Shown here piece by piece: positions 16,186 through 52,090 of a DNA stretch of 64,000 nucleotides. Each line of letters starts with the position of its first letter. The first letter of the stretch is position 1. The stretch lies in contig NW_005434666.1 in NCBI RefSeq assembly GCF_000315625.1, positions 741,869-805,868 on the forward strand, in the 5' to 3' direction. This DNA comes from Guillardia theta CCMP2712 (lineage: Eukaryota; Protista; Cryptophyta). The position numbers were made by a program, and so were the translations under genes. The notes beneath the pieces were generated by a model. The model did no database searches. It saw only the letters and a list, made by a program, of their open reading frames with translations, and was not told where the DNA came from.

Positions 16186-16664
16186 GCACCTGCTGTAGCC
16201 GCTCAGTCACAAGTCACCCGCTCCTCCCCCTCGGCCCCACACATGAGCACCTTCTCGCTTCTTGAATAGAGCACGTGGGATTGAGTCGCGAGTCTGCAGC
16301 TACTCCAGTGAGGCTTAGCAGGCAAGTCGTGACACACGTCAGAGGGATGTTGACAAGGGAGCAAATGGCTGGGTGTTCGTCGCACAAGAAGGTTGAAGGA
16401 TGGAATTGTGTTGGTGGAGTTGAAAGCTGGAGGGGCTGCGGGAGAGAAGGAGAGCGAGCGAGAGCGACAGCAGCAGGAGCAGCAGGTACACCCGAGCAAG
16501 TGCAATGGTGGCAGGAAGAGCAGGAGGAGCATGCACGAGAAGCAGAGGCAGGAGGAGCTGGTGGATTAGGAGCAGCAGAAGCAGGAGCAGGAGCAGCAGG
16601 TGTACGAGCAGGAGCAGCAGGAGAACGAGGTGCAGGACTCCGCCGGGGACTGGAGGAGATGCCG

Positions 16665-17455: not shown

Positions 17456-18565
17456 TGCGACTGGGAGGAACAAGTTTCACTCCTCCCTTGTCCTCCCTGG
17501 GGCAACGCATGGGGGCAACGGCCCTCCACAGGTGCTGTACTACTGGAATATATAATATTACTTAATTTTTCTAAAAAAGAATTTATACGTCCTCCTATGC
17601 CAATGATTTATTTTATATAACTAATTATGGATACAGATAATTGTATTGATATTAATGAATTTATATTTTATATGTTTCTGTCAGTACAACTTCTGGTACA
17701 AGAACGTATATCTCTTGACTCTAATAATTAATTATAGAACGCACTTATTAGTTTTGGGCTTGACCCGGTACACATTTGGAGCGCTATGAACTATTTCACA
17801 GTGACCCTGCATCCTAGATTTCAAATAATCCAAAAGAATTTGAAATTTCCTGAGATTTTGGAGCTGTGCAAGTCGAGGTGGCAAGGGGCAAGGGGAGGAA
17901 ATGCACATGGGAATGAGGATGGCGAGCAGGAGGAGAGGTGATGAGCAAGGAACGAGGAGGTGAAGACAAGGGCAGACAAGAGCAGCAAGCATAGGAAATC
18001 GAGAAGAGAAGAGATTATTCCGAGGTCCAGCTGGAAATAAAGCAAAGGTAGTGTGAAGCTGATACGGTCAAGCTCTGGCAGCCCTGTCAGGACCATGCTT
18101 GAGGAATCTTTTCAGAATCGCAAGAAGAATGAGATGTCTTTAAGTAGGCATAAATGCCTTGATGTCCATACCAGCACCCTTGCAGGAATTGAACACGCCG
18201 GGCAGCCTGACCAGAACCGTATTGATGTCAATAGATGCGCATTGTGTTTACTGTACTGTTGCTGGCTTAACCTTGCTATCGCGTTAAGGGAGATAACCCG
18301 CGACAAATCTTCTAACTGCATACATCTAAAATAGCTTGCGATGACACTGTGCAATTTGCTTGCTTGTGAATTGCCATAATGCTGTTGAGGATTTTTGTAC
18401 GGCGGTTAGAAACTTCAAGTGATTGAATCTGGTTTGCAGAGACTGTACTCACCCTGCTGGAATGGCAAAGCAAAGATACCGTACAGATGGAAGGTGGGGG
18501 TGATCCGGTGGCGGATGGTGAGGTCTCACTGCACCTTCAGTGGACACTACACGACGGCAGGGGCG

Positions 18566-29100: not shown

Positions 29101-30508
29101 GCCGTCAACCCCGAGAACAAGGTGAGAGGTCATGGCAGGGATAAGCAATGACTCGCTGCTCCTGCCGCTCCTCGACTCGTCCCAGGAGATTTTCTTCCAC
29201 CTCCTCCTCAGCTTTCTGTCCACCTGCGGTGAGGAAAGGAAGGGCATTGAAAGCTTCAGCGCCTGAGCTGCAAGTCAGGAAGATGGAGGAGGAGGAGAAA
29301 AGAAACAAGTGAGAGGGGAGAGAAGCGAGAGGGGGAAGAGTTGGGGAGGGAGCAAGATGAGAGGGAGGAAGAGCAGGGGATGGAGCAAGACGAGAGGGAG
29401 GAAGAGCAGGGGGAGAAAGAGGGGGGTGAGAGGAGAGAAGGAGAAGAAGACAAAGAGGAGGGAAGAAAGGTCTGCCTCGCTCGCGTGATGCTTGTACAAG
29501 TGAAACATCCGCTCCCTTGGCCCATCACTTGCCTTCAAATGCTGTCAGTCAAACGCTTCTTTCACCGACACCAGATGCTCACCTCCTCCTCCTCCTCCTC
29601 CTCCTCCTCCTCCTCCTCTGCTTCCTTCATGATAGCGCAGAGGAACCAAGAGTCTTGCTTGCGGCACACTCTCTTAAAACGAGGAGCGAAAGGAGAGGGA
29701 GAAACTTTGATGGCTTCTACCAGGCGATCAACCAGCTGATCCATATCGATCGCCTGCAATGCGCGTGAGAGGAGGAGGAGGAGGAGGAGGAGGAGGAGGA
29801 GGAGGAGGAGGAGAGGACAAGCCATGCTGAGCACAAAGCAGGAGAAAGGGAAAAGCAGGAGGGAGGAAGAAAGAGTTGGGGAAGGGAAGGAGGAGATGCA
29901 GAGCAACAGGCAAGACCGTCGAGGTAGAGGAGGAAGCGAGCATGTGGTAGGGGCTCAAGGATAGACTAGCGATGCAGACAACATCAGCCCCATCCCTCCT
30001 CATGTCCATTATCTGCTTGCTCGTCAGAATGCCTGGAAACCTGCTCGCCTCCCTCCTCCACCTTCACCACCACCACCACCTCCTCCTCCTCCTCCTCCTC
30101 CTCCTCATCGCCCCTCATCTCCGTCTTCCTCCTCCCTCTGGTCTCAATCCCTTTGACCTCTCCGCCTCCTCTCGCTCACCTGCACCATCACAGCCCTGCT
30201 GACCCTCTTGTCCATCTCCTGCAGACATGACCCCACAAACTCGCACAGCTCAAAGCTTAGCTTCGCTCCTTCCCCTCCCCCTCCCTCCTCTCCTGCCACG
30301 CGGAACTCAAGTAGCCGCCTGTCGTCGAAGAGCTGCGACTCAAGGAGAAAGCTCAAGGCCTGCGCGAGCATCAAGACAGCAGGGAGGAGGAGCACGAGAA
30401 GAACGCGAAGAAAGGGAAGACGGGGTGGAGCAGCATTAGGAAGAAGAAAAGACAGACGTGCGTTAGGAGGAGGAGGAGGAGGACGAGGAGGAGGAGGAGG
30501 AGGACGAG

Positions 30509-30580
<72 letters not shown>

Positions 30581-30646
30581 GAGGACGAGGAGGACGAGGA
30601 GGACGAGGAGGACGAGGAGGACGAGGACGAGGACGAGGACGAGGAG

Positions 30647-30688
<42 letters not shown>

Positions 30689-32445
30689 GACGAGGAGGAC
30701 GAGGAGGACGAGGAGGACGAGGAGGAGGACGAGGACGAGGAGGAGGACGAGGACGACGAGGAGGAGGAGGAGGAGGAGGAGGACGAGGACGAGGAGGAGG
30801 ACGAGGAGGACGAGGAGGACGAGGAGGACGAGGAGGAGGACGAGGAGGAGGACGAGGAGGAGGACGAGGAGGAGGAGGACAGGACCTGGGCCTTGTCGCG
30901 GGAGGTCAGGGAGCAGCCGTTGCTGACCACTGAGATCGCCTGCTCCAACCTCTTCCTTTCCATCCTCCTCGAAAGAAACTCGCTGAGGGCCTCAGACAAG
31001 CCACGAACGAGTCGCTCCCAGCTGGTATCAAGCTTGTGCTCCATAACCACACGAAGTCGATCGAGCATTGACTACGAGATTCGTCAAGACAGAAAGAAGA
31101 ACAAGGACAAGAACAAGGACAAGGACAAGGACAAGAACAAGGACAAGGACAAGGACAAGGACAAGAACAAGGACAAGGACAAGGACAAGGACAAGGACAA
31201 GGACATATTCGCACTCTGGCCATGACGAGAGCTGGGATCGCTCCTATACAAGCGAGGAAGGAGCAGGCGATCAGCTCAGCGCCTCCTCCCTGGAGCTTCT
31301 GCTGGAGACGCTGAGATAAGTCGAGGAGGTCGAGGAAGACAAGCTCGCGGCCCTCCAGCTTCTCGTCGAGCTCCACCAGCCTCCACACTCGCTGCCATCG
31401 ATCGCCGAACTCCCTCCGTAGGTCTGCTTGCATCTGCTCGCGCTGCTCCCCCCCTGATCGAGACACTCACCAACGAAAGACTCCAAGACAGAAGAGGAAG
31501 CAGAGGCGAAAGACAAGAAGGAGAGGAGGAGGAGGCATGGGAAGTGGGAACAAAGGCTAGAGACTCATGATCAAGAGGAGACAAGGAGATACAATCAGTT
31601 CGCAGCTCAAGCACAAAGACGTCGACAGAGCTTGCATTAGCCAAGAACGTCTGGACAGAAGTGAAAAGCTGCTGCAAGGTCTGCGATAGGAGGTGTCAGC
31701 CATGATTGAACAAGTGAACGAGCAGCAGCAGCAGCAGCAGCAGCAGGAACACCAGCTCGAGCTCCTTCAGGTGCTGTTCGAGCGCTTCGTCTTGACTCCC
31801 CCGGGCCCACGCGAGTTGAGCGAGGGTGAGAGGTCGCTGAGAGACCGGGAAGGCGCAGCCGTGCTGGTCGATCATGCGGAAGCGAAGGTGGAAGACTCTT
31901 GGAGGATAAAGAGCGTGAGGGGAAGGGAGAAGACGTCATGAGAAGCGAAGGAAGGAAGCAAGGGGGAGGAGGAAACTTGCGCGGACCTGATATGATCCGC
32001 GTGGGAAGTGACAAGGTCAAGAAGCGAACTGAGCGATTCCTGCAGCCCCACAACCTCCAGCAGCTGCTCCCAGTGTCACGCTCCCCCCCCATGGGAACTT
32101 TTCTCTACTCCTAATTTCCTCCTCTTCCTTTCTCCCTCCTCCTCCCTCTCTCCTCCTCCTCCTCCTCCTCCCTCTCTCCTCCTCCTCCTCCTCCTCCTCC
32201 CTCTCTCCTCCTCCTCCTCCTCCTCCTCCTCCTCCTCCTTCCTCTGCTGCTCACCTCGTGGCCGTCGAGAGGACGCCCAATCTCCGAGCGACGAGCATGG
32301 CAGAGAGCAGAGACGCGCTGCAGCGAGAGCCTGAGGGCGATGAGAGACGAGGAGAAGCCTCTACGAGGGAAGCATCAGGATGAGACGATGACGAGAGAAG
32401 AGAAGAAGACGAAAACGAGGAGGGGGGAAGGGGGGAGACGAGGAT

Positions 32446-32511
<66 letters not shown>

Positions 32512-32780
32512 AGCAGTTCGGAGCCTCGCCTGTGCTCAATGCATCTCGAGAGGAAGAGAATACTCCATACTCTCCGCAGGAGGTTCCACTGACCCCCTAC
32601 GAGAGGAACGGAGGGAAGAAAACAAAAGAGAACCTCGGGAACCTAAGCAAGGAAAGGGGTTAGGAATGAGGGGTGAAGGTTTAGGAGAGAAAGAAGGGTG
32701 AAGAGGAAGGTTTGAAATGAAGGAGAGAGCGAGGACCTTTCTCTCCAAGAGCCATTCTTCCTTGAACATCTCACGTCCTC
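25193..32780 (-). CDS. DUF4062-like + NACHT/STAND NTPase region of a very large protein (TEP1/NWD/nephrocystin-3-like)
   Basis: LRTRLAGVFHDTQQELEQLRRFLIPSL (DUF4062-like), Walker A LLLVGKPRSGKSSLLA, Walker B VLMVDGLDE; 771-aa ORF 26932-29247; stop at 25195-25193. Probably contiguous with the WD40 exons upstream. Confidence 0.62.
30464..30880. repeat. Mixed (GAG/GAC)n trinucleotide tract, intronic
   Basis: About 415 bp visible; starts right after a minus-strand CAG|GT donor near 30884. Confidence 0.95.
31099..31204. repeat. (GACAAG/AACAAG)n hexamer repeat
   Basis: Directly visible. Confidence 0.95.
32437..32510. repeat. (GACGAG)n hexamer repeat
   Basis: Directly visible. Confidence 0.9.
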
Positions 32781-35700
32781 CACTTAGAACAGAAAGACAA
32801 CTTCTCTGTTTCCTGTCCAGGTCTCAGCAGACAAAAACAGGAAGAGAAGGGGGGGGGGAAAGTGGACGACGATGACAAGCTGAAGACGTAGTCGAACACG
32901 AAGATGAAGAAGAGAGGAGTGAGAAGGAGGAGCGCGAGCTGTTACATGATCAGGAACTCCTCGTACTGCTTCAAAGCGAACAATCTCTTCACGTGCCGCT
33001 TCAAATCCCTTGCTCCTTCCTCCATCTCCTTCCACCTGCCTCGATCCGCAAGCATTCGAACGCGGGCCTGCAGAGCTGCAGAGGAGGAGGAGATCCCTCT
33101 CACTTCCTCGTACAAGCGCCTCCCCATCCGCCGCAGCAGCAGCGGGGAGAGAACGCGGACGAGCTGAACGCAGGAGACTCTATGATCGATCTTCCTTCTT
33201 GCCGCTGCCTGCAGTTGCAGTCAGAGGGGAAGAGGCGAAGGCTCGCGCAGGGCCTGGAGGAGGCAGGAGGACGCGAGGGCTCGAGCTCGAAGCTGCTCCT
33301 CCATCCTCGTCCGCAGGTCCAGCAGGTCAAGATGGCGCCAAAGACTCTCATCCCCTCGCGCCTTCTCAAGCCCATGCCGCCGCAGCAGCTCGCGGTTCGC
33401 AGCTGCTACCTCAGCTGGGAGACCGAGCACAAGCACGCAGCCCCCAGTCGTCCCCACGACAATCGCCCGCTGCTCTGCTTGCAGAGAGTCACTCGATCCT
33501 CCTCCTCCCTCCTCTCCCTTTTCCAGCTTGTCCTCCTCCATCCTTGCTCAACGGGTTCGCACCTTCATCATACCCGACGCAAGCAGCAGTGCATGGCAGG
33601 TCTCGGAAGGAGGCGAGCAAGTCTCCGGTGATGCAGCTCCGCACCAGAAGAGACGCGGAGGAAGGGGAGCGATCGAGAGAGAAGAGAAGGAGCCTGAGGA
33701 AGAACTAAGCTCAGGGGATAAGACAGCAACGCGAGAGGATGTGACGGCAACGCAGCAGGCACGGGAGAGGAAGGCGGCTCACCCAGAAGCGTCGCAGCAG
33801 ATATGAAGAGCAGCAGGAGCTAGGAGCAAGAAGAAGACGATTTTCCTCTGCTCCACGTCCACGAATTGAAGCTTTCCGCTGGGAAGGAGGACGAGAATAA
33901 AGAAACAATGAACAGCAATGGCGACGGGTGACTGCTCAAACGAAAGATCAAACTTCTTGTGCGATTGTTCTGAGAGCCCATCCACCTGCACCTCCATCAA
34001 CTCCTCCTCCTCCTCCTCCTCCTCCTCCTCCTCCTCCTCCTCCTCCTCCCCCTCCCCCTCCTCCTCCTCCTCCTCCTCCTCCTCCTCCTCCTCCTCGACC
34101 TCGTAGGCAGAGAGAGTTCTAGAGGAGGAGAGGGTGACCAGAAGGAAGGAAGAGGATGAGCGCATGTCGTGCTGGCGCGTCACGAGACTTCCCCAGCACC
34201 CCGACAGCCTTGTACTCGATGACACCTCGATGCTGTGCTGGTGAAGGACGATCAGGGGCATGAGCACCCAACATGGCAGGAACAGAGGCAGATCAAGATG
34301 TACCAGCTCAAGCTCAAGCTCAAGCTGTGTGAGCTGATCTCACCTGAACGACTCTGAGGGATTGGAAGGCGGAGAGCGAGTCGAGGAGGAGAACCCTCCC
34401 ATCCTCCGCCTTCGATGCCAGCCAGCGACCTGCTGGAGCCCAGCTGAGGCCCAGCACGTCTCCCCTCGAGACCCGGACAGACGCGTGAAGCTTGAATGCG
34501 AGCGAAGGCGAACTAAAGCTGCGAGAGAATGAGGATTCAGAACCAGAAGAGAGGAGGAGGAGGAGGAGGAGGAGGAGGAGGAGGAGGTACGGGAGCCCCA
34601 GAGAGGCAGGGGAAGGGACAAGACATTCATACTTGGAGGAGAAGACGAGGACGCGGCCGGTCGACATGCCGCAAGCGAGGAAGAGGCGAGAAGGATCGAC
34701 AGCAAGTGAGGAGATCGCGAAGTTGCCCTGGCTGTCTGGTCGTCAGCCTTCAAGGACAAGGACCAACGAGATAAACCTCCAGCTGACTGCAAGCTGCCTG
34801 TCAGCCTGCGAGACTTTCCGGAAGTCTAGATCAGCATGCGCCAAGTTGGCGATGTCGATGCAGGAAGGAGACAGAAAGGAAACAGAGGAGGAGGAGGAGG
34901 AGGAGGAGGAGGAGGAGGAGGAGGACGGAAGCGCATAATTTCTTGGTAGGTGCTTGTTACGGAAGTATGTGAGGAAAAGAAGAATCCCTGTCCGTCCGGC
35001 AGCGATCACTCCTGTCCCGCTTGCGAACAAGTCAAACAAGTCGATCACATTTTGAGAGACGTCCGAACAAGGAGGGCGAAGCTCAGGTACCTGGACCTGC
35101 CGTACAAGGAGAGGCTTGATATTTCTCCTGGAAACGAACTGGAAGGAGTGAGCAGGAGGCATGAACGAATCGCCTCCTCACGTCTGGCTGGCGATCTGCT
35201 GCCTCCTCTGAGTGTCGAAGACGATCAGATCCCCGTCGTCCGTGATGACTAGCAGCGCATTAGAGACACGAATCATCTTGGAGATCAGCGGGTGCAGTGG
35301 AGTTGAATCTCTAGGCACGTCGCCCAACACTGTGTCCATGCTCTCGGACTTGATGTACTTGTCCTTGCACACTTGAGCCTGGTCAGCATCATCAGCTGTC
35401 GTTCTGCGCAGTCATATGTCAGAGACCCAATCTTGCATTACGGAACCTTTCTTCTTGTCAAGAGCCAGCACAACTCCTTGCGACCCTCCTACAAGCACTC
35501 GCTCGCCTTGGCACCTAGTCAGCTTGATCGACCCGACGACACTCAGACCTGGCAGGCAACAGATCGAGGAGAACAATCCTCTCCTCGCATCCAGCTGGAC
35601 CTCGCGGATCTTTGTTCCCTGTCGCTTGTTGATCATGCACAAGAATTTCTGATGAGATTGTCTACCGTGAACATGTCCACAACCCAAATCAAGTTATGAC

Positions 35701-36452
35701 GGCTGGCCACACGTCAAGGAAGAAACACCGGCAGAGACCAACCTCAACACAGAAATGCTGGCAGAGGATTCATCGACGGAACCATCTATGAAAAGTTCTT
35801 CTGCGCTTGTACCTATCCTCCACGTGTACGAGAGATCAAACAGCCTATCTTCGCTGTCCTGCACAAGGGGGGTAGCGTGCATCCTCTTCTTGACGGACTG
35901 CCAGCTCAACGCCACGAGGTCATGAGAAGTGAGGAGGAAGAAGTCGAGCATGCCCTCTACCGCTAGGATAGCAGGGAGCACAGGCGAGGCTTCGACCTTG
36001 TGACTGGTGGTGGAGTACTCGGAAAGTATCCTGAAGGAATGCCAAGGGTCTCTCAACCTCACAGCATAGATCGGGTTGCTCCTAACGCTCTTGACTGCAT
36101 GCTCTAAGCTCACGAGCAGCTTACCTCCCTTAGGGCAGTGCATCTGTCGCACTCTCCAATCCTCCTCTCCATGGCGCTCTCCGACGGACACCCGTGCTAG
36201 TTGCTTCATAGAGGCAAGGTCCCAGCAGATAAGACATGTGCTGTCCGCTGAAAACAGGCAGCCGCTAGTCTCCTCGACCGCAAGAGCTTGCACCTCCCCT
36301 GCATGCCCTCGGAAATGAGCCCGCGCACCATCCCCCAAGCTGTGCCGGACGACGAAATTCTCGGCAGCAAAGAAGACCAGGCCATGAGCGCGCGAGCTCA
36401 CGACAGGGAGGCAAGAGGAGACGCCGAAGATGGCATCGACATCCGATGCCAT
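32780..36452 (-). CDS. WD40-repeat region (probable N-terminus of the STAND gene, or a separate gene)
   Basis: ATG at 36452; HFRGHAGEVQALAV..LFSADSTCLICWD, VLGLSWAPAGRWLASKAEDGRVLL, LLVITDDGDLIVFD. Confidence 0.7.
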
Positions 36453-36619
36453 CAGTCCATGTGTAGGGAGCGAAGGGCGACTGGCAGGGGGGATGGGGCA
36501 GGAGATACGTGGTAGGTAGGAACGGATCAACGGGAGACAGTGGAAGGATATTGGAGGGGTCCATTTTACTACAAAATTTTAAGTCGGAGAGGGTGGGGTA
36601 GCTACTGAGACCAGCGGGG

Positions 36620-38204
36620 ATGGACGAAACCGGACGGGCTGATGGGAGTAGAGCGACGAAGGAGGAGGAGAGGGGGAGGGAGGACAAGGTTGTTGAGAAG
36701 GAAAAAGAAGTTGTAGGAGAGAGGGGAGCGAGTGAAGCATCGAGTGGTTGCTTTGAAGAGGGAGCAGCAGGCAGAAAGGCCGGAGACATGAAAGTCCAGA
36801 TTGAAATTCCTGAGGAGAAAGGACCGATGTCAGAGAAAGAGGAGAAGGCTGTGGAAGCTCTCCTGCTGGTAGATGAAGATCTAGCAGCAGGAAGTTGGTC
36901 CCCTGTCAGGGAAAAGGAGATCTTCTTCTTCCCCAAGGTGAGTCCCAATCAAAGGTATGTTGTCGTTCTTGAGATGGGTTGCATTGCAGGCGAATAGAAT
37001 GCATTATGCTGACAGCAGCAAGGACAAACGTGCCGTCAGAACATCTCCAACGAGATCCTCCGCAGAGACGAGGGTCACCCCTGCACACAAGGACTCGCAG
37101 GAAGAGTCGTTTGACGACCTCGGACTGCGCGAGAGCATATTGCGAGACCTCCGATGGATACAAGACAATGACGATGAGCGTGTGATGGAAATCATGAGAC
37201 CGCGTGTCATCTCATTGGAGCAAGAGACAAGAGAGCAAGGTCATCCGCATGAATGCGAGAGACCTCATCACAACGCCGAGAACGAACTCCATCGCTCGAA
37301 CCCGGCAGAACCGAAACATGAGGAGGACAAGGAGGAGCACTGCCCGGCTTCGCCTGAGAACAACAAGAACGAGCACTTGATAGCGAGGATGTTGTCCAAT
37401 ACCCCTTCAAGTCCTCCCGGCTTGACTCCCAAGGCTGTCATGAGCATCCGCTCTCTCAGCGGAAGGACGGCGAAGCAAGTTTACACAAAGGTGGGCTATC
37501 CGCGGTCGGCGAGTGTCCTGTCAAAGCGAAACGACGCGGAGAGAAGTGGCAACGAGCGAGCTCGGGGGGAGAGGCTCATGACGGCTCCTACTCGCAACCG
37601 CAGCCATGAGATGGGATTGGAAACCTCCTCCCCCGCCTCTCGGGTGAAGCTGACCCCGCAACCCTCGCTCATGCTTACTTCTTCTCACAGGAAACCTCTC
37701 GCGCAGGGAGACAGGCGTTTCAGGGGTTGCAATTCGAACAAGCTAGAGAGCAGTTCCGCACTCTTGTCATGCCTTCTCGGCAGGCGTGGGGGAACTTTGG
37801 GGAACAAGCAGGAGTGCACAGAAGACTTTCATCGGACGGAGGCTCACTAGAAGCAAATCAACGTGGCAGGTTTACTCCTTCCCTCTGCCCCCTCCCCAAA
37901 CACCTCCCTCTATCTCTCCCCCACCATTCGCCTTCTCCTCTGTTCTCCTGCAGTTCCTCCCCTTCCTCGCCTGGTAAGCTCGTGAGCTGAAGTCCGTGTG
38001 ATCAGGCGGCCAGTGGGCTTGACTGTGCAGCGTCTGGACCTTCAGTTTGGAGTTGAGAATTTGGGAGGTGGAGCCGATCGAATCAGAGGACATGCCAGAG
38101 AAGCGGAAAGAAATCCTACTTCCACAAGGAACGCGCTGAAACCAAGGCCATTGAAGACTAACAACGCTCTTGCTGTCCTGCATTCGAATTCTCCTGTTCG
38201 ATGA
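36620..38204 (+). CDS. Hypothetical hydrophilic protein, multi-exon
   Basis: ORFs 36620-36997, 36957-37850 and 37998-38204 can be joined by GT..AG introns; no domain recognised. Confidence 0.5.
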
Positions 38205-42354: not shown

Positions 42355-45200
42355 TCAAGCCCCTACGTCCTTCATCATGGCCTCGTTCTCGCTCTTAGTC
42401 TCCACACTGCCTTCAGAGCGCTCGCGCACCTGTCACTCCTTCACTTCTCCTCCTCCTCCTCCTCCTCCTCCTCCTCCTCCTCCTCCTCCTCCTCCTCCTC
42501 CTACAGTCACCATGGAGGCGAAGATGTGCTGGAGAAATCCGGCGGCTCCGAGCAGAAACGCGCAAACGAGGAAGACAGAATCATCTGAAACGGTTCCTGG
42601 AGCAGCGAGTGAAAACAAAGAGGTACAATTGCTGCAAGCACCTAAGTTAGAGAGGACGAAGATGACGATGAGGTTGAGAGGAATGCGGAAAAAGTTGTAG
42701 ACAGTTGCGCGGACCTAAGGGTTCAGTTCAACGACAGGAGAAGACCGGAGAACACGGGAGGGGAAGAAAGAGGAAGACGAGAGAAGAAGAGCACGAGCAC
42801 GAGGGCATGGCGATCATTGCGGTAGCTTTGGTGGAGGTGGAGGAGGTTGTGGTTGAAGAGCGGTTCCGGTGAGGGGAATAAGGATGGGATTGCTTAGAGT
42901 TTCGTGCTGTACCTCTTCAGGAACATATTTGGACTTGATTGTCGCCATGCTCGGCCAGTAGACTCCACAGATCAACTGCAAAGGTTGAGAAATAGAGAGG
43001 GCGGGGGGAGGGGCAACGGCAGGTCACCTCGAAGAGGAAGAAGCAGAAGAGAGTGATGTATGCGTTGATTCCAGCCATCGCCGGCACCCCCAGGCATACA
43101 GCAGCGAGCAGGAAGACTTCGCGCATGAAGACCTGCAGCCAGTGAGAGGAAGATGAGGCTGGTGAGGCCGCAGCTACCACAGGAGGTCCCCGCAGGGTTG
43201 TGATGCTCTTGACGAGGCTCGAGCCGATGACCATGCAAGCCATGAAGCAGCCGAACACCTTCAATGGGGCTAAGGGGCAGCTGGACGACAAGTGAAGCCT
43301 ACCTGGCCGTGTGGCAGAGGCTTGAAGAGAGGTTCAAGCTTCGGCGTCCACATGAACACCTTGTAACAGCTCAAGTCAATGTCTTGCTTGCCCTCTATCA
43401 ATTCGTGCAAACACGCACAAAGATGTACATCGCGCCTTCGAAGCATGACCTGTGACGCAGATTAGAGCGTGAAAGAGACCAATTCAAATATCACTGAGCC
43501 ATTCCCAAGACTAAAATCTTAGGATCTCTCTTGAAAATTTCAATCGCTGCCTGAGCATTCAGATCAATGAGTGATCTCGATTAGCCATCTTGTCCTTGTC
43601 GTTGATCTCACTTGAACTTTCCCATTGTCGTCGTAGCGACCAGAAGCGAGAGAAGACTCTCCCTTGTTTTCAGCCCAAGTAAACCAGATGACCTGCGATC
43701 AACTCAACCTCCATTATCCTGTACATTCTTCATCACGCTTTACCGCCATGGCCAGCGCGAGGAAGACAATGGCGAGGTCGAAAGGTGCGACCAGACTGTG
43801 AGGAATGGGGATGTGAGGCGAGAAGAGCAGGGAGGCAACAGACCTGTCGAAAGAATCCCTCACAAGAGCTCCAAGCCATCCAGCAGCGATGGCAACGATC
43901 CCATTCCCAACCGTCGCGAGGGAGAAAGTCTGGCTCAACCACTGGACGACAAGCGTCATGTCAACAGAGAAATAGGGAAGTCAGCTTGTACACCTCGGAA
44001 GGATAGAAATGTTTTCCGTGCTCCGCCACCATCCAAGATTCGAAGGACGAGAAGAGAATTGACGTAGCAATTCCACCTGCGAATCTCATCTCACAATCTG
44101 AACTGGAAGTATCCATCTACTGCAACAACGTACCAGTTAATCGTCCAAACAAGAGGACGTTGAAGTTGGGAGAGTGCTTGGTCAAACAAGATACCTGAAA
44201 AATTGCTTCATCAGAAGAAGTAGATCGTGATTTGTCAGTCCAATCTTACAATGTAAGTCACACAGTATACTAGACATGAAAGTTTTCGCCCATATCTGAA
44301 CTTGAAAATCAAATGCGTCTAGTTCATACTCTAACCAGCACTTGTCTGCGAATGATCCAGCGAATACGCCGAACACCGCACTGCTACCAAACCCGACGAT
44401 AAAGAGCACTCCAATCTGTTCTTCAGATTTACATGCTAACACGCTCATCTCATCTGATTCAACCTCCTTCTTGGTGAACTTGTAGTAATCGTATAGCGCA
44501 TAAACGTAAGGTCCTTGCAACCTGAACGGTCTGATCACTCGGGTTACCTCCAAGAGAGTATCTTACCAATCAGCCATAACAGAGCAGAAGTAGACCACCA
44601 GATATAACCGTTGGAACTTCTTGAAGTCAGACTAGGCCAAGTGTCAGAAGGAACACCTATTGCTGTTGCTGAAGATAGGAGAATCTCAGGGTGAAGATGA
44701 AAAGAAGAGGATGAAGTCCAGAAAGGAAGAGGCTCCTCTTGTCTAACGTACCGTGGTGGGTGATCCTGCAGTCTTTGAACGATTCTGAAGAAAAGCAGGT
44801 GAAATTAGCGTGTCGTTGCTTTCAATGAGCGCTACAACAGGCCAGCAACCAGCAAGCCAGCGAGCCAAGAGGGAAGGTAACAAGGGAGGGAGGGGGAGGG
44901 GAGCAGGAACATGATAGCCGTATCGCATAAATGAATGTCGCTGCGAAGGACAGAGGACGGCTGCTCCAGCATAGCCGCTCTCTTCGTCCGGTCAGCTGGG
45001 CATCGCCCTCCAGGGGCAGTAGTGAGGAGAGGAGGGGAGAGGAGGGGAGAGGAGGGGAGAGGAGGGGAGAGGAGGGGAGAGGAGGGGAGAGGAGAGGAGG
45101 ACGGGATGAGGAACGAGGGAGGGGAGGCAGGTCATGCCTGCGCCAGCTGAATCGCCGCATAGAGGCCGCAGAGCGCGAAGAAAAGAAAGTCGAAGAGCAT
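42355..45200 (-). CDS. MFSD5: Molybdate-anion transporter MFSD5/MOT2 (DUF791), multi-exon
   Basis: MLFDFLFFALC..., YLVVYFCSVMADWLQGPYVYALY, IGVLFIVGFGSSAVFG, ADKYGRK, HSPNF, WLSQTFSLA..GNGIVAI, APFD, FEGAMYIFVFMWTP; stop at 42357-42355. Confidence 0.93.
45025..45100. repeat. (GGAGAGGAGG)n decamer repeat in the first MFSD5 intron
   Basis: Directly visible. Confidence 0.9.
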
Positions 45201-46913
45201 GGCGCTGCTGGATCCTAGGGCTGGCGGGTGGATTGAACACAAGGGGTACTTCAATAGTAGAGGTGGGTTTATTTCACACGGGTGTATTCCTCTGCAAGGA
45301 CAGGGTAAAGGTAGGGTAGGGTGGGTCTTTGAACAGATCATGGTAGGGGTCTCAGATGAAGGGGGGTGAGTGACGAAGCAATGGGTTGTGTCACATGTAT
45401 CCATGACGATACTACCATCATTATTACTTACGGAAAGTACCGTACCGTCAGTGACACCCTGAAACCTGGCTTCTGGACTCCGACGCCGGGTCCGGCCCGC
45501 CCGGCGCACACAGCAATACAAGTTTAAGTTTGGGGGACAGCAAAAGCCAAGCCGGAGCCTCACAGCCTGCCTGATGATGCAGGACGCTACGTGGTACACA
45601 TCCCTGGTCTGCGCGCTCTCGTCGACTCGTCTCATGAGCACTTCAGTAAGTTCCTCCGCCTGCGCAGCGCAATGTGACTGTGATCCTCTTGTCATGCGGA
45701 AGTTTCCTCGCCTTGACGTTTACTGTGCATAGGATTTACTGGCAGAAGGTAAAAAGTGCCTCAAGCAAAACAGAGCAGGAACAAGCTAAACCTCCAGGCA
45801 CACAGTCCACAGCGAGAAGCTGCACAAACACACACAAAACACAAGCCCGAAAAGAACCAGCACTGCTGGCACCCAGACGCGGCACCGCCAGCCCAAGCGC
45901 GAAGCCGCGCAGACAAGCAGCCTAAGGGTCAGGCAATCAAGCAACAAGCAGCAGGAGCATGCAGGAGGAATAACATCCCTTAGACGCGATACCCGGAGGC
46001 AGCCGACTGACCACTGTCAGTCGAGACGTCCGCTGCCGCCACAAAGCGGGCGGCCGCGGACGGAGAAAGGGCAGCCGCCGACAAGGAGCCGGCGTTGCCC
46101 GGGGGTCCGCCTGGGGCAGCGGACGGAGGGAGGCTGGACACATGAACATCTGGGGCATAGGATTTACTGGCAGAAGGTAAAAAGTGCCTCAAGCAAAACA
46201 AAGCAGGAACAAGCTGAACCGGCAGGCACACAGTCCACAGCGAGAAGCTGCACAAACACACACAAAACACAAGCCCGAAAAGAACCAGCACTGCTGGCAC
46301 CCAGACGCGGCATCGCCAGCCCAAGCGCGAAGCCGCGCAGACAAGCAGCCTAAGGGTCAGGCAATCAAGCAACAAGCAGCAGGAGCATGCAGGAGGAAGA
46401 AAATCCCTTACACGCGATCTGGTATCTGGCGGACATCACTGCTCAGCGCTCGATGCCTCTTGAGGATGCGGCGCTTGGTCGGCACTTCGTTCCTGATGAC
46501 GGCCTGCTGCTGAGGTCTTGGCTCGAGAGACATAGGATTTACTGGCAGAAGGTAAAAAGTGCCTCAAGCAAAACGCGCCGCCACCTATCAGCGCCTCACC
46601 ATGCAGCTGACGCTGGAGGCGCTCCTGTCTGGTGCGAGGCGCATGACGCCCTTGCGGGCGCAAGCTTATTACGGATTTACTGGCAGAAGGTAAAAAGTGC
46701 CTCAAGCAAAACAAAGCAGGAACTTCTCGAGCCAGAGGACAGCTCCTCCTCGGACTTTGTCGACGGTCGCCCGAGGAGTCTTCGCCAGAGGTCCAGAGTG
46801 GAGTCGACGCGCCCACTGTGACGTCGGATGCCTCCGGAGAGCTCGACACCACTGGCTAAATGGATTTACTGGGGTGCTTGCTGGTCCGAGCTCACCTGCC
46901 TCCGCAGCCGGTC

Positions 46914-48860
46914 GGATTTACTGGCAGAAGGTAAAAAGTGCCTCAAGCAAAACAAAGCAGGAACAAGCTGAACCGGCAGGCACACAGTCCACAGCGAGAA
47001 GCTGCACAAACACACACAAAACACAAGCCCGAAAAGAACCAGCACTGCTGGCACCCAGACGCGGCACCGCCAGCCCAAGCGCGAAGGGTCAGGCAATCAA
47101 GCAACAAGCAGCAGGAGCATGCAGGAGGAAGAAAATCCCTTAGACGCGATACCCGGAGGCAGCCGACTGACCACTGTCAGTCGAGACGTCCGCTGCCGCC
47201 ACAAAGCGGGCGGCCGCGGACGGAGAAAGGGCAGCCGCCGACAAGGAGCCGGCGTTGCCCGGGGGTCCGCCTGGGGCAGCGGACGGAGGGAGGCTGGACA
47301 CAGGAACACGGTACCGCTCGAGGTAGTCCTCCTCGCTAGCCTCCGAGTCAGCGGTAGCCGAGTCAGCGGTAGCCGCCCGTGACGGCGGCGACGCCGCGGC
47401 AATGCCCAAGGACCGGCGTGACCCGACCGATGCCGGGGAGGAAGCAGGCGAGCTCGGACCAGCAGCAAGCACCCCAGTGGTGTCGAGCTCTCCGGAGGCA
47501 CCCGACGTCACAGTGAGGGACGGAGACGCCTCGCCAGCTCCGCGCCGATCGTCGGGGCCACTCGAAGGGTGTCCCCCATCGGAGTCGGAGACCTCCGGCG
47601 AAGACTCCTCGGGCGACTCGACAAAGTCCGAGGAGGAGCTGTCCTCTGGCTCGAGGAGTGCTTGCGCCCGCAAGGGCGTCATGCGCCTCGCACCAGACAA
47701 GAGCGCTTCCAGCGTCAGCTGCATGGTGAGGCGCTGATAGGTGGCGGCGCGTTTGCGAGCCAAGACCTCAGCAGCAGGTCCGTCATCAGGCACGAAGTGC
47801 CGACCAAACGCCGCATCCTCAAGAGGCATCGAGCGCTGAGCAATGATGTCCGCAAGATACCAGATGAAGCGGAGGGTGTCAGGATGCAGGGTACCGTCCG
47901 TCGAGATGGCAAGAGGGATGAACGCTCGAGGAGGAGTAGTCATAGCATATGCAGCGCGATGTTTGCGAATCTTCTCAGACGCTGCAACATGGAGGGCGTC
48001 GAGGTTGACCTCCCCCCACTTGGTCAGGTCGGCAGAGCTACCAATGTAAGGGTGGACCAACGTCACGTCCGCCATCAAGCCCTCGTACTGCTCGGACCCT
48101 CGATCGCGGATTCCAGGGATGTGGATATCGCCCTTCATCTTGCGGCCATGAGGATGGGAGGGTACCTGCCGTCGAGAACGAGGATCCCCCACTGTATCGA
48201 TGACGCTCTGAAGACCAGCTTCGTTCAGCATCGACCGAATCGTACGAGTAAGGTTGTCATGCGCCGTTGGAAGCTTGGAGGATCGGCGTTTGCAGGTCTG
48301 GAGATGATGTGCAGCAACGGAGGGGTCGAGCTCGCGCTGACATCCATCACATTCCGTCGGACACTGGCAGATCGGCATGTCATGGAGATAGCAGTCGAGC
48401 ATCTGAGCATAGCGGTGCGGGAAGGCCTTGAGGGGGTACCCATAGGATTTACTGGCAGAAGGTAAAAAGTAGTAGCTCGAGACTCGCATCGGAGAGTGGC
48501 TCAGGTCTCGCTCAGGAAAATGAGCGAAGATGGTAGACTGCAAGACCCTATCCTGCGACTTGAGCGAGTGTGTCCTGCGGCTGTGCAAGGTGAGGATATC
48601 ACGCTGCTGATCGGTCAGCGCAGCGCGAGCATGCACATGGCGAGGGAAGACGCGCATGACAAGAGGGGTCACATTTCGCTGCGCAGGCGGAGGAATGAAG
48701 TGCTCATGAGACGAGTCGACGAGAGCGCGCAAACCAGGGATGTGTACCACAGATGCCGGGGGGCGTCCTGCGTCATCAGGCACAGCAGCCGGGGCAGGTG
48801 GGATCGCCGCGCCATCTGCAGCCGGTGCAGGAGCCTTGACACTCCGATGCCGCACAGCCC
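46914..48860 (-). mobile_element. Longest copy: 5'-truncated RLE-type (CRE/R2-group-like) non-LTR retrotransposon, C-terminal ORF part plus ~225 bp 3' UTR
   Basis: ORF ends at 47140. It has a zinc knuckle CDGC..HLQTC (48292-48351), HDNL, KGDI, ADVTLVHP, EKIRKH and FIPLAISTDG, which is the order of RLE motifs. No RT catalytic motif is seen. Confidence 0.8.
47140..48860 (-). CDS. Zinc knuckle + restriction-like PD-(D/E)xK endonuclease with long Ser/Ala/Pro/acidic tail (partial ORF)
   Basis: Part of the 585-aa ORF 47140-48897; its first ~12 codons come from an adjacent opposite-strand fragment, so the listed start is probably fortuitous. Confidence 0.75.
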
Positions 48861-51672
48861 CGGTCCCTGGGCGTTGATGCGGCGTCGCCGCCGTCACGGG
48901 CGGTGTTGGTCTCGGCTACCGCTGACTCGGAAGCCGCCAGATACCAGATGAAGCGGAGGGTGTCAGGATGCAAGGTTGCTTGCAGCAAATCAAACACCGT
49001 CCGTTGAGATGGCAAGAGATACATACAAGAGGGATGAACGCACGAGGAGGAGTAGTCATAATCCTTTTTACCAGTCATGGCATATGCAGCGCGATGTTTG
49101 CGAATCTTCTCAGACGCTGCAACATGGAGGGCGTCGAGGTTGACTTCCCCCCACTTACAGTCAGATGCCTCCGGGTATCGCATCTAAGGGTGTCGGATTT
49201 ACTGGCAGAAGGTAAAAAGTGCCTCCTATGCTATCGTCAAGTAAAACAAAGCAGGCACCGCATGGATTTACTGGCAGAAGGTAAAAAGTGCCTCAAGCAA
49301 AACAAGCAGGAACAAGCTAAACCTCCTGGCACACAGCGCACAGCGAGAAGCTGCACAAACACACACAGCTGGTCCGAGCTCGCCTGCTTCCTCCCCGGCA
49401 TCGGTCGGGTCACGCCTTCGCCGGAGGTCTCCGACTCCGATGGGGGAAACATACACGGGCGGCTACCGCTGACTCGGCTACCGCTGACTCGGAGGCTAGC
49501 GAGGAGGACTACCTCGAGCGGTACCGTGTTCCTGTGTCCAGCCTCCCTCCGTCCGCTGCCCGGACCCCCGGGCAGCGCCGGCCGCCCGCTTTGTGGCGGC
49601 AGCGGACGTCTCGACTGACAGTGGTCAGTCGGCTGCCTCCGGGTATTGCGTCTAAGGGATGTTATTCCTCCTGCATGCTCCTGCTGCTTGTCGCTTGATT
49701 GCTTGACCCTTAGGCTGCTTGTCTGCGCGGCTTCGCGCTTGGGCTGGCGGTGCCGCGTCTGGGTGCCAGCAGTGCTGGTTCTTTTCGGGCTTGTGTTTTG
49801 TGTGTGTTTGTGCAGCTTCTCGCTGTGGACTGTGTGCCTGGAGGTTTAGCTTGTTCCTGCTCTGTTTTGCTTGAGGCACTTTTTACCTTCTGCCAGTAAA
49901 TCCTATGTTCGCAAACATCCAGACGGTGGCGCCGACGACGGCGGCGCGGAGCTGGCGAGGCGTCTCCGTCCCTCACTGTGACGTCGGGTGCCTCCGGAGA
50001 GCTCGACACCACTGGGGTGCTTGCTGCTGGTCCGAGCTCGCCTGCTTCCTCCCCGGCATCGGTCGGGTCACGCCGGTCCTTGGGCATTGCTGCGGCGTCG
50101 CCGCCGTCACGGGCGGCTACCGCTGACTCGGCTACCGCTGACTCGGAGGCTAGCGAGGAGGACTACCTCGAGCGGTACCGTGTTCCTGTGTCCAGCCTCC
50201 CTCCGTCCGCTGCCCCAGGCGGACCCCCGGGCAACGCCGGCTCCTTGTCGGCGGCTGCCCTTTCTCCGTCCGCGGCCGCCCGCTTTGTGGCGGCAGCGGA
50301 CGTCTCGACTGACAGTGGTCAGTCGGCTGCCTCCGGGTATCGCGTCTAAGGGATGTTATTCCTCCTGCATGCTCCTGCTGCTTGTTGCTTGATTGCTTGA
50401 CCCTTAGGCTGCTTGTCTGCGCGGCTTCGCGCTTGGTGGTTAGGATTTACTGGCAGAAGGTAAAAAGTGCCTGGGCTGGCGCTGCCGCGTCTGGGTGCCA
50501 GCAGTGCTGGTTCTTCTCGGGCTTGTGTTTTGTGTGTGATTGTGCAGCTTCTCGCTGTGTGCTGTGTGCCTGGAGGTTTAGCTTGTAGCTTGAGGCACTT
50601 TTTACCTTCTGCCAGTAAATCCTATTCTTGTTCCTGCTTTGTTTTGCTTGAGGCACTTTTTACCTTCTGCCAGTAAATCCTATGACCCTTTGTCGGAGGT
50701 CTCCGACTCCGATGGGGGAAACATCCAGAGTGGAGCCGACGACCGGCGGCTGCTGGGGACACACTCGTACCTTTTTATTTCGCATCATTCTGCTCGCGTT
50801 GCTCGCTTTGAGCATCTGGAGATGGCTCGTTCGAAAGCATACACCGTGCCGATAGGCAGGCCTCCAAGTGTAATCCCGCCAGTCACCTCAAAGTGAAGAA
50901 GCTGAGTCTTGAGACGGCGCAAAACTTTCGAGAATCTCAAGCCTCTCGAGCCAAGAATCTCTCTCTTATGAAAGAGGCAAAGGTCAGCAGAGTGCTGGAG
51001 AGATAGGAGGCGAACAACCGGAGAGGCTCGGAAGACGGCAAGCTTGCACCTTCGTTGATGCTTCCATCAAAATAGTCGCGACTCGCCCTTCCCTCGATGG
51101 AGTCGAAGAGTGCCTGGCGGTCGAGGGAGTTGAAGGCGTTCTTTGCATCCCAACTACATCTTCATCATCGCCACGAGCGTGAAGAGGCAGGAGCGCGGAC
51201 GCGGTTGGCGACCGAATCGCTCGAGGGTGAGACGAGAGGATGGATCTGCCTCCTCGACGAATGGCCGACAGGGCAGGAATCAGGAGGTCCGGCATCCGGC
51301 CAAGAAGGACCCCTTGGAGGATGTGTTTGCAGTAGAGCTTCAAAGCTGCAGGATTACCAGAGAGGGGAGACAGGTCCGCAAAGGCGCTGTAGCGCTTGAT
51401 CGCCTGAATCAGGCTAGTGGTGTCGAGAATGTCAGTCAGATCCTGCTCCAGTGCCGCAAGCGCCTGCTGGGGGAGATGAGCCGCGGAAGCACTCCCCTAG
51501 GCAGGCGACGCACCAGCAGGAAACTTCTCTTGTGCTTCAGCAAGAAGATCAGCAAGATTGTCAGCCTCGTAGATGCCTGAGCTTAGCAGCGTCCGTACGC
51601 CAACTGAGTCTTTCGTCCGCTCGCAGAGGTGAGGGACAGGAGAGGCAACAGGCTCAGTCGGCCCTCTTGCCT

Positions 51673-52090
51673 TATGCGAGTAAATCTCTGCTGCTGCTGC
51701 TGCTGCCTTGGCTCTCTTGGAACAGTATTACTCAAGAGTTTTACTCGCATACTCAAGCAGAAGAAAGCAGCAACAAGCAAAACCTTCACGCACACGTGAC
51801 ACATCACACAGCGAGATAAAAGCTGCGCAACTAGCACTGCTGGCAACCAGGGAATGAGGGAAGCCGGGTATACAAGCAGGGAGGGGCAAGCGACAAGCAC
51901 ACCGGCACAGCAGTGGACGTGAGCCCCTACACGCGATGGACCAAGAAAGGGCAGCCGCTAACACAGAGCCGGAGCTGCCCGTCTCAAGACGTAATGGTAG
52001 CATTTGGTCGGCACTTTGCTCCTGATGATGGACCTGCTGCTGAGGTCTCGGCTCGCAAACGCGCAGCCAGCTATGAGCGCCTGACTATGA
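51673..52090. mobile_element. Older diverged relic of the same element family
   Basis: 51736-51980 resembles the antisense 3' UTR and ORF end (CTCAAGCAG..AAAGCAGCAACAAGC, AGCACTGCTGGCA, CCCTACACGCGAT, AAAGGGCAGCCGC); 52000-52090 is a sense fragment encoding AFGRHFAPDDGPAAEVSARKRAASYERLTM. Confidence 0.75.

What the first reader, a model, noticed from the sequence alone, without database searches (positions are those of the whole stretch)
45556..50745. Self-shuffled retroelement array: one invariant 3' terminus re-initiated 12+ times between fragments of the same element
Seen: the 26-mer GGATTTACTGGCAGAAGGTAAAAAGT is unmutated in 12 copies, usually preceded by CATA/TA and followed by GCCTCAAGCAAAAC. 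Nine copies are on + and start antisense pieces of about 415, 260, 44, 51, 1950, 30, 31, 105 and 30 bp, plus an 11-bp partial. Between them lie sense-strand fragments of the same element with many small indels. Established: RLE non-LTR elements start cDNA at the RNA 3' end, so copies share the 3' end and are 5'-truncated, and the R2 RT can template-jump. Inference: read 5'->3' on +, each CATAGGATTTACTGG... is what an RT would make first from the element RNA. The locus therefore looks like a record of iterative, telomerase-like re-priming that alternated with copying of the opposite strand, giving a repeat/self-fragment array next to a Zn-knuckle nuclease ORF. This is the best candidate for an undescribed system in this window.
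Basis: partly seen in the sequence, partly recalled or inferred. Interest (0 to 1): 0.9.

Follow-up and report, generated by a model that had tools for sequence, protein, structure and literature searches.

The report
Self-nested R2-like retrotransposon cluster
This stretch of the alga Guillardia theta is a pile-up of one R2-like jumping gene that has repeatedly inserted mostly very short, front-truncated copies into older copies of itself; this is an unusual habit for this kind of element, not a new kind of genetic system.

Summary
The window is Guillardia theta nuclear DNA, not human.

The 26-mer lies at the 3' end of a multicopy non-LTR retrotransposon. Its protein is R2-like in profile and in predicted fold: reverse transcriptase, CCHC knuckle and restriction-like endonuclease.

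The "sense fragments" are older host copies of the same element. The short antisense pieces are younger, front-truncated insertions into those hosts. The host flanks are contiguous around each insert. The 3' end is followed by a variable 4-12 nt tail, and the 5' junctions show microhomology. In sister loci about half the inserts have 4-8 bp target duplications.

All seven G. theta loci examined carry the same kind of compact 5-11 kb mosaic. None of 69 termini lies in about 126 kb of flanking DNA. No target motif was found, only hot spots.

Template jumping does occur: there are tandem termini and a 5S rRNA-element chimera. It is a side process. A single telomerase-like event is not supported.

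The closest behavioural precedent is the Zepp/ZeppL self-nesting LINEs. I rate this a new variant of a known kind.

The parts
45568..45715 (+). Old 5'-truncated host fragment of the element (reference 2354-2500), with indels
   Evidence: blastn tiling, 80-91% identity
45728..46148 (-). 3'-terminal piece B: CATA plus 417 nt (reference 3795-4189)
   Evidence: 99% complementary to 49579-49907 (I2)
46156..46418 (-). 3'-terminal piece C: CATA plus 259 nt (reference 3953-4189). Its 5' end lies at the hot spot.
46417..46903 (+). Host copy D/F/H (reference 3238-3663). It is interrupted by three inverted micro-insertions.
   Evidence: Flanks are contiguous in reference coordinates: 3347|3349 and 3443|3444
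46526..46574 (-). Micro-insertion E: 40-nt terminus plus 9-nt tail. Microhomology AAAC at its 5' junction.
46666..46723 (-). Micro-insertion G: 52-nt terminus plus 6-7 nt tail
46856..46872 (-). Abortive 11-nt terminus GGATTTACTGG with tail, joined at microhomology ACTGG
   Evidence: Sequence read; 11-mer located
46905..48842 (-). Long 5'-truncated copy I/K (reference 2294-4189), inserted inverted into host D/F/H...L. It has no reverse-transcriptase region.
   Evidence: 99.7% identity. Host resumes at reference 3687 at window position 48860.
47140..48897 (-). ORF of 585 aa: linker, CCHC knuckle and restriction-like endonuclease (GD...DV...EK), then an acidic/Ser-rich tail
   Evidence: 95% identity to GUITHDRAFT_116199. 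Profile aligns the CCHC and D/D/K residues to R2Tg. Fold matches R2.
48439..48470 (-). Micro-insertion J: 26-nt terminus plus tail, same orientation as its host. It adds 11 in-frame codons (FLPSASKSYGY) to the ORF. Possible 3-bp duplication.
   Evidence: Intact paralogues read ...SSYYPLKAF
48860..48931 (+). Host fragment L (reference 3687-3761), a continuation of D/F/H
48934..49156 (-). Old piece M (reference 3082-3253), with indels and a 12-nt remnant at 49061-49072 at the hot spot reference 3159-3165
49158..49190 (+). Host fragment N (reference 3934-3966), ending at the hot spot at the ORF stop codon
49191..49255 (-). Terminal piece O/P: 34 nt plus 19 nt, with an internal 11-nt indel
49260..49367 (-). 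Terminal piece Q: 104 nt, joined head-to-head (5' end to 5' end) with piece R
49368..49907 (+). Copy R (reference 3640-4189), ending ...AAATCC TATG
49912..50626 (+). Copy S/U (reference about 3525-4189), head-to-tail after R
   Evidence: 99% inverted repeat with 47084-47547 (I1)
50437..50472 (-). Micro-insertion T: 30-nt terminus plus tail, inverted within S/U
50627..50684 (+). 54-nt terminal piece V, head-to-tail after S/U and separated from it only by TATT
50694..50748 (+). Old fragment W (reference 3506-3560)
50811..51706 (-). Old, degraded piece X covering the reverse-transcriptase N-terminal region (reference 231-1877)
   Evidence: 79-93% identity with indels
51752..52089 (.). Oldest remnants Y (on -, reference 3842-4161) and Z (on +, reference 3295-3381). 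This is the right edge of the cluster.
   Evidence: 82-90% identity

Best explanation
The region 45568-52089 is a self-nested cluster of one Guillardia theta non-LTR retrotransposon family. The family's protein is R2-like: reverse transcriptase, CCHC knuckle and a PD-(D/E)XK restriction-like endonuclease.

New copies are made by target-primed reverse transcription. A nick in the target DNA primes cDNA synthesis from the 3' end of the element RNA (...CTTCTGCCAGTAAATCC plus a 4-12 nt tail, most often TATG or TATA).

Synthesis usually stops very early. 54 of 69 pieces that carry the 3' end are 200 nt or shorter. The cDNA end is then joined to the target by microhomology.

The nick is almost always made inside an existing copy of the same family, on either strand. 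Repeated rounds therefore interleave young terminal pieces, in both orientations, with older host fragments.

Some junctions, where termini sit in tandem or where the element is fused to 5S rRNA, come from the reverse transcriptase jumping to the 3' end of another RNA within one event.

Shown here: the family identity, the protein architecture, the anatomy of the junctions, and the same pattern at every locus examined. Inferred: the priming mechanism itself, and why the element targets its own copies.
For: **Identity and protein.**
- The ORF at 47140-48897 (-) is 95% identical to G. theta proteins. About 50 paralogues were found, and some carry the Pfam reverse-transcriptase domain RVT_1.
- An AlphaFold2 model of paralogue P0020 has pLDDT 86 and pTM 0.86. 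Its best PDB matches are full-length R2 proteins 9dou, 9nl3 and 8gh6, with E 8e-19 to 3e-16 and TM 0.50-0.57.
- A family profile hits the R2 reverse transcriptase at E 2e-26. It also aligns the CCHC and the D/D/K nuclease residues.

**The shared 3' end.** 69 pieces end at the same reference position. Their lengths run from 16 to 2043 nt: 27 are 60 nt or shorter and 27 are 61-200 nt.

**Insertion into pre-existing DNA.**
- 24 simple events have host flanks that are contiguous in reference coordinates.
- About half of them have true duplications of 4-8 bp, for example CCACCGCT, CTACACCC and CCTCGCCA.
- Both orientations occur, about 36 in the host's orientation and 19 inverted.

**Age order.** Short inserts are 100% identical to the reference terminus in all loci. 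Hosts are 80-98% identical and carry indels.

**Self-targeting.**
- All seven G. theta loci hold one compact block of 5-11 kb, about 54 kb in total.
- About 126 kb of flanking DNA holds no terminus.
- A second G. theta family, 38% identical, sits as one ordinary copy.

**Template jumping.**
- L005:14146-14209 is the 3' half of 5S rRNA, fused upstream of a 140-nt terminal piece (E 5.6e-4).
- Termini in tandem occur in L001, in L006:14907 and in the window at 50622/50627.
Against: - The window mosaic cannot be fully un-nested. Piece M (48934-49156) has no 3' end of its own, and the junctions L|M|N and Q|R are not simple insertions.
- The four clean micro-insertions inside the window have no convincing target duplication, only 0-3 bp.
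- No sequence motif was found at 45 mapped junctions; information content is below 0.45 bit at every position. The basis of self-targeting is therefore unknown.
- The loci were reached through gene models of this family. A genome-wide census of solitary insertions was not possible with these tools.
- Nothing here tests the enzyme.
Confidence: 0.75

Rival explanations
1. The whole array, or most of it, was made in one or a few events by a reverse transcriptase that kept re-initiating on the RNA 3' end (template jumping) and also switched to copy the opposite strand.
For: - Tandem termini are separated only by a 4-22 nt tail: window 50622/50627; L006:14907; L001:3280-3368.
- In L005 two pieces sit in one host site, between host positions 3949|3949.
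- A 5S rRNA chimera shows jumping to the 3' end of a foreign RNA.
- Pieces within the window are 99-100% alike.
Against: - A jump out of a host template and back to the same position, plus or minus 8 nt, is needed for each of 24 events. Target duplications of 4-8 bp are what staggered nicks in DNA give.
- Hosts are older than inserts.
- No short unit is reiterated.
- The same young terminus sits in many different hosts at seven loci.
Confidence: 0.12
2. The clustering is passive. Insertion is random, and only copies that land in existing transposon DNA survive selection in a gene-dense genome. Alternatively, the element targets a chromatin state rather than its own sequence.
For: - No site motif was found.
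- Clusters lie between ordinary genes.
Against: - Inserts of 16-60 nt would be harmless in introns and intergenic DNA, yet none occurs in about 126 kb of flanks.
- Clusters are built almost only of this one family.
- A second LINE family in the same genome is not nested.
- Hot spots recur at the same reference positions in different loci: 3948-3966 at least 7 times, also 2372-2387 and 3159-3171.
Confidence: 0.1
3. The mosaic is an assembly artefact or the product of DNA-level rearrangement (duplication or inversion) of a simple copy.
For: - Long 99% inverted repeats lie within the window, for example 464 nt. These are the kind of sequence that misleads assemblers.
- I had no reads to check.
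Against: - Micro-insertions of 26-54 nt with both flanks fit inside single reads.
- The same architecture occurs in seven scaffolds and in an independent ENA assembly (L001).
- Precise termini, tails and target duplications are not made by rearrangement.
Confidence: 0.03

Closest known systems
R2 and other non-LTR retrotransposons with a restriction-like endonuclease (R2, NeSL, Utopia, R4, HERO, CRE groups)
   Same: - One protein with a reverse transcriptase, a linker, a CCHC knuckle and a C-terminal PD-(D/E)XK nuclease.
- The fold and the profile match R2 over the full length.
- Copies are truncated at the 5' end and share the 3' end.
- There is no poly(A), and 3' junctions vary with extra nucleotides.
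- There are signs of template jumping.
- A distant homologue carries an N-terminal cysteine protease (a UCH domain). NeSL and some Utopia elements carry a Ulp1 protease (PMC4640811).
   Different: - It does not insert into rRNA, snRNA or spliced-leader genes; it inserts into its own copies.
- No site motif was found.
- Motif C of the reverse transcriptase reads YADN in this family.
- Sequence identity to R2 is only 13-15%.
- The clade within the endonuclease-bearing elements was not determined.
- The N-terminal DNA-binding region was not recovered.
Zepp / ZeppL LINEs of green algae (Chlorella, Coccomyxa, Chlamydomonas)
   Same: As described in PMC8226300, citing Higashiyama 1997: nested insertion that targets existing copies, giving arrays made mostly of 3' ends because of frequent 5' truncation.
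   Different: - Zepp elements belong to the L1 clade, have an AP-type endonuclease and carry poly(A) tails.
- They form one, probably centromeric, cluster per chromosome.
- The G. theta element has a restriction-like endonuclease and no poly(A).
- Its gene models lie on dozens of scaffolds.
- It inserts in both orientations, with many pieces of 16-60 nt.
L1 twin priming and L1-U6 chimeric retrocopies; R2 template jumping in vitro (from my own knowledge)
   Same: - Inverted head-to-head pairs (Q|R).
- A chimera with a small RNA (5S rRNA).
- Re-initiation at the 3' end of an RNA.
   Different: Here both arms of inverted pairs start at the element's 3' end. These events are a minority beside plain nested insertion.
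Telomeric arrays of HeT-A/TART (Drosophila) and GilM/GilT (Giardia); telomerase (from my own knowledge)
   Same: Head-to-tail runs of variably 5'-truncated copies.
   Different: - The clusters are internal, between genes.
- Both orientations occur.
- No short templated repeat is present.
- No chromosome end is involved.

Membership tests
Non-LTR retrotransposon with restriction-like endonuclease (R2-like architecture) | Reverse transcriptase domain of the LINE / group II intron type | tested here: met
   RVT_1 in paralogues, E 5e-8 to 5e-6. The family profile hits the R2 reverse transcriptase at E 2e-26 and L1 ORF2 at 1e-10. Fold match.
Non-LTR retrotransposon with restriction-like endonuclease (R2-like architecture) | CCHC zinc knuckle followed by a C-terminal PD-(D/E)XK nuclease with catalytic D, D and K | tested here: met
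   The window ORF reads CQC...H...C, KGD, ADVTLV and SEKIRKH. The profile aligns these to R2Tg C..HC, KPD, VDVTV and EKVRKY. The full-length fold match to R2 includes this region.
Non-LTR retrotransposon with restriction-like endonuclease (R2-like architecture) | Copies share the 3' end, are variably 5'-truncated, and have no LTRs | tested here: met
   69 pieces end at the same reference position, with lengths of 16-2043 nt
Non-LTR retrotransposon with restriction-like endonuclease (R2-like architecture) | N-terminal zinc-finger or Myb DNA-binding region | not tested
   The 5' end of the element was not recovered. The reading frame stays open through the start of L001 as a Gln/Pro-rich stretch.
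R2 clade in the strict sense, and other site-specific groups (NeSL, Utopia, CRE) | Insertion at one specific site in a multicopy RNA gene (28S rRNA, spliced-leader RNA, U2 snRNA) | tested here: not met
   The flanks of inserts are the element itself. Rfam finds no rRNA or snRNA gene in the window or in three loci.
Zepp-like self-nesting LINE clusters | New copies land in existing copies, giving arrays rich in 3' ends | tested here: met
   7 of 7 loci. No terminus in about 126 kb of flanks.
Zepp-like self-nesting LINE clusters | L1-clade element with an AP-type endonuclease and poly(A) tail | tested here: not met
   The protein is R2-like with a restriction-like nuclease. Termini end AAATCC plus a 4-12 nt mixed tail, not poly(A).
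Zepp-like self-nesting LINE clusters | One cluster per chromosome, at the centromere | not testable with these tools
   No chromosome-scale assembly or CENH3 data were available. Paralogous gene models lie on about 40 scaffolds.
Telomerase-like reiterative synthesis | Tandem copies of a short unit templated by one RNA segment | tested here: not met
   Pieces range from 11 to 1934 nt. They are separated by host DNA or by non-repeating tails.

The most novel reading that the evidence does not exclude
An R2-like retrotransposon that homes into its own genomic copies without a fixed DNA target motif. One way this could work is pairing of the element RNA with homologous DNA, which would direct the nuclease to nick either strand. 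Priming could then occur from both nicks, which would explain tail-to-tail pairs separated by 9-23 nt of host. That would be a homology-guided way of choosing a target, and it is not known for LINEs.
Probability: 0.15. Interest if true: 0.75.

Novelty: new variant of a known kind. Interest (0 to 1): 0.4.

Why it matters
- R2-type elements are studied, and now engineered, as precise site-specific inserters. A relative that keeps the R2 architecture but chooses its own copies as target, with no visible site motif, would show another way for such enzymes to find a safe landing place.
- The many inserts of 16-60 nt give a natural record of aborted target-primed reverse transcription and of junction repair.
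- For genome annotation, about 50 G. theta 'hypothetical proteins' are fragments of this mosaic. An example is P0001, which reads across several pieces.

Tried and rejected
- **Pfam on the window ORF:** no hit.
- **phmmer of P0020 against PDB sequences:** no hit. Only the profile and the fold search found R2.
- **Spliced-leader relic or introner reading.** The 26-mer contains AG|GTAAAA on + and a pyrimidine tract followed by CAG on -. I dropped this once intact paralogues and the shared 3'-end anatomy explained the copies.
- **Target motif search:** 45 junctions aligned, with no informative column.
- **RNA structure at the 3' end:** no more stable than shuffles, z = +1.25.
- **Rfam.** The only hits were microRNA-like matches caused by inverted junctions or (CTC)n/(GAG)n repeats, apart from the 5S fragment found in a targeted search.
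- **Two scans of metagenome contigs for the terminus:** 0 hits. The first Rfam call was over the size limit and was resent smaller.
- **Literature:** the searchable library holds no paper on G. theta non-LTR elements.
- **Full un-nesting of the window mosaic:** it failed at pieces L|M|N and around O-R.
- **Coordinate reference.** The reference used for tiling (ref0) is two natural copies placed end to end: L001:1-3286 plus the reverse complement of window 46905-47816.
Full report
**Source of the window.** The window is nuclear DNA of the cryptophyte alga Guillardia theta CCMP2712. The ORF at 47140-48897 (- strand) is 95% identical to GUITHDRAFT_116199, and about 50 G. theta paralogues were returned. 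No toxin, effector or virus of animals, people or crops is involved.

**Check of the observation.** The 26-mer occurs 12 times with no mismatch, nine on + and three on -, against zero in shuffles. All 13 copies of its first 11 bases also lie between 45732 and 50670. Sense-strand fragments with indels lie between these pieces.

**What the element is.**
- Longer paralogues carry a reverse-transcriptase domain (RVT_1). They read straight through where the window copy has extra codons...MRVSSYYPLKAF... in P0020, against ...SSYY-FLPSASKSYGY-PLKAF in the window.
- A search of 1.8 billion representative proteins found 757 relatives. Several are full-length and come from unnamed environmental contigs. 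One has an N-terminal UCH protease.
- An AlphaFold2 model built with 27 of these sequences is confident (pLDDT 86, pTM 0.86).
- Its best PDB matches are the full-length R2 proteins of zebra finch, silkmoth and turtle (E 8e-19 to 1e-14, TM 0.5-0.57). Human L1 ORF2p comes next.
- The family profile hits the R2 reverse transcriptase at E 2e-26. It also aligns the C-terminal CCHC and the nuclease residues: GD / DV / EK in this family against PD / DV / EK in R2Tg.
- The window holds no intact reverse transcriptase. The long copy is truncated at reference position 2294, and the piece covering the reverse-transcriptase region is old and broken.

**The 26-mer is the 3' end.** In the window and in six further G. 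theta loci (L002-L007), 69 pieces end at the same reference position...CTTCTGCCAGTAAATCC. Their lengths run from 16 to 2043 nt: 27 are 60 nt or shorter, 27 are 61-200 nt, and only 5 exceed 1 kb. After AAATCC comes a variable tail of 4-12 nt. It starts with TAT in more than half of cases, and otherwise with ATT, ACT or something else. Some tails recur next to different hosts (TATGTCA three times, TATATCCT three times). They may therefore come with the RNA, as a few bases of source-copy flank. This is an inference I could not test.

**Nested insertion rather than one shuffled event.**
- In 24 cases a terminal piece sits between two host fragments of the same family that are adjacent in reference coordinates.
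- In the window these are E (46526-46574, host 3347|3349), G (46666-46723, host 3443|3444), J (48439-48470, host 2665|2667) and T (50437-50472). The 11-nt partial is a fifth case, joined at the microhomology ACTGG.
- In sister loci one host copy can carry a string of such inserts. L006 has five within reference 2191-2717. About half of all events have real duplications of 4-8 bp, for example CCACCGCT, CTACACCC and CCTCGCCA.
- The 5' junctions show 1-10 nt of microhomology.
- Both orientations occur, about 36 in the host's orientation and 19 inverted.
- The short inserts are 100% identical to the reference terminus in every locus, whereas host fragments are 80-98% identical and carry indels.
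- Together this is the signature of repeated target-primed reverse transcription into pre-existing DNA over time. The 'sense fragments between the antisense pieces' are the hosts.
- The long window copy (46905-48842) is itself an inverted insertion into the host that runs 46417-46903 and resumes at 48860, at reference 3663 and then 3687.

**Self-targeting.** Each of the seven G. theta loci contains one compact block of 5-11 kb built from this family, about 54 kb in all. The remaining 126 kb or so of sampled DNA holds no terminus. An independent ENA assembly contig (L001) shows the same thing: two tandem terminal pieces replace 160 bp of the ORF. A second G. theta family, 38% identical in protein, lies as a single ordinary copy. 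I found no sequence motif at 45 mapped junctions. Some host positions are used again and again in different loci:
- reference 3948-3966, at the ORF stop codon, at least seven times in both orientations;
- reference 2372-2387;
- reference 3159-3171.

At these spots, inserts in the host's orientation abut the left edge and inverted inserts abut the right edge, 15-22 nt apart. This is what priming from nicks on the two strands would give. The reason the element homes to itself is not shown by my data.

**What remains of the template-jumping idea.**
- Termini sometimes follow one another with only a tail between them: window 50622/50627; L006:14907, where an 18-nt terminus precedes a 146-nt one; L001:3280-3368.
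- In L005 two pieces share one insertion site.
- L005:14146-14209 is the 3' half of 5S rRNA joined upstream of a 140-nt terminal piece (targeted Rfam search, E 5.6e-4). That is the expected product of a jump from the element RNA to the 3' end of another RNA.
This explains a minority of junctions.
- Nothing resembles telomerase. No short unit is repeated.

**Limits.**
- Pieces L|M|N and O-R in the window do not resolve into simple insertions.
- The four clean window micro-insertions have at most 3 bp of duplication.
- The loci were reached through gene models of this family, so the absence of solitary copies rests on their flanks only.
- No reads were available to check the assembly.
- The 5' end and the N-terminal domains of the element were not recovered.
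- The clade among endonuclease-bearing elements was not determined.

**Comparison and verdict.** In architecture the element belongs with the R2-like non-LTR retrotransposons that carry a restriction-like endonuclease. It fails the site-specificity that defines R2 proper, NeSL or Utopia (PMC4640811). In behaviour it is closest to Zepp/ZeppL, LINEs of green algae that insert into their own copies and build arrays of 3' ends (PMC8226300). Those belong to the L1 clade, with a different nuclease and poly(A) tails. I found no paper on this G. theta family in the searchable library. I rate it a new variant of a known kind. It is of moderate interest to transposon specialists, mainly because of the motif-free self-targeting and the abundance of very short abortive copies.

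Noticed in passing
L005:14146-14209: The 3' half of a 5S rRNA (Rfam RF00001, model positions about 66-120, E 5.6e-4 in a targeted search) is fused upstream of a 140-nt terminal piece of the element, inside a host copy. It looks like a chimeric retrocopy made by a template jump.
   Followed up: partly
L005:17341/17349; L006:16413/16444 and 17661/17682; L004:1646/1691: Two element termini face each other tail-to-tail, separated by only 9-45 nt. This suggests priming from nicks on both strands of one site.
   Followed up: partly
window 49061-49072: A 12-nt remnant (ATCCTTTTTACC), made of bits of the terminus, sits in old piece M with a 7-bp host duplication. The host position (reference 3159-3165) is also hit three times in L005.
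   Followed up: no
alignment A1 (family of P0020): Motif C of the reverse transcriptase reads YADN across most of the family, instead of the usual YADD (consensus A.ADN).
   Followed up: no
P0102 (environmental homologue, 1577 aa): A ubiquitin C-terminal hydrolase (UCH) domain lies N-terminal to the reverse-transcriptase and nuclease part (Pfam E 4e-29). This recalls the Ulp1 proteases of NeSL and Utopia elements.
   Followed up: no
window 45004-45103: A (GGGGAGAGGA)n microsatellite of about 10 units lies just left of the cluster.
   Followed up: no
window 29578-29815: (CTC)n and (GAG)n tracts face each other across about 150 bp. Rfam scores this as a microRNA precursor on both strands, which is a false positive caused by the simple repeats.
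   Followed up: yes
window 16001-18000 and 28001-38000: Strand composition is strongly skewed: GC skew 0.41 and AT skew 0.27 at 16-18 kb, and AT skew 0.15-0.38 over 28-38 kb. ORFs there have no Pfam hit.
   Followed up: partly
L010:9068-13574 against L008: A second R2-like family in G. theta (P0057/P0200, ORF of 1468 aa) is present as one near-full-length copy, followed by a 135-nt inverted copy of its own 5' end.
   Followed up: partly
G. theta gene models P0001, P0044, P0047, P0048: These annotated 'hypothetical proteins' are read across several mosaic pieces, including translated antisense stretches and the terminus (…FCLRHFL.SASKSY…). They are annotation artefacts of the clusters.
   Followed up: partly
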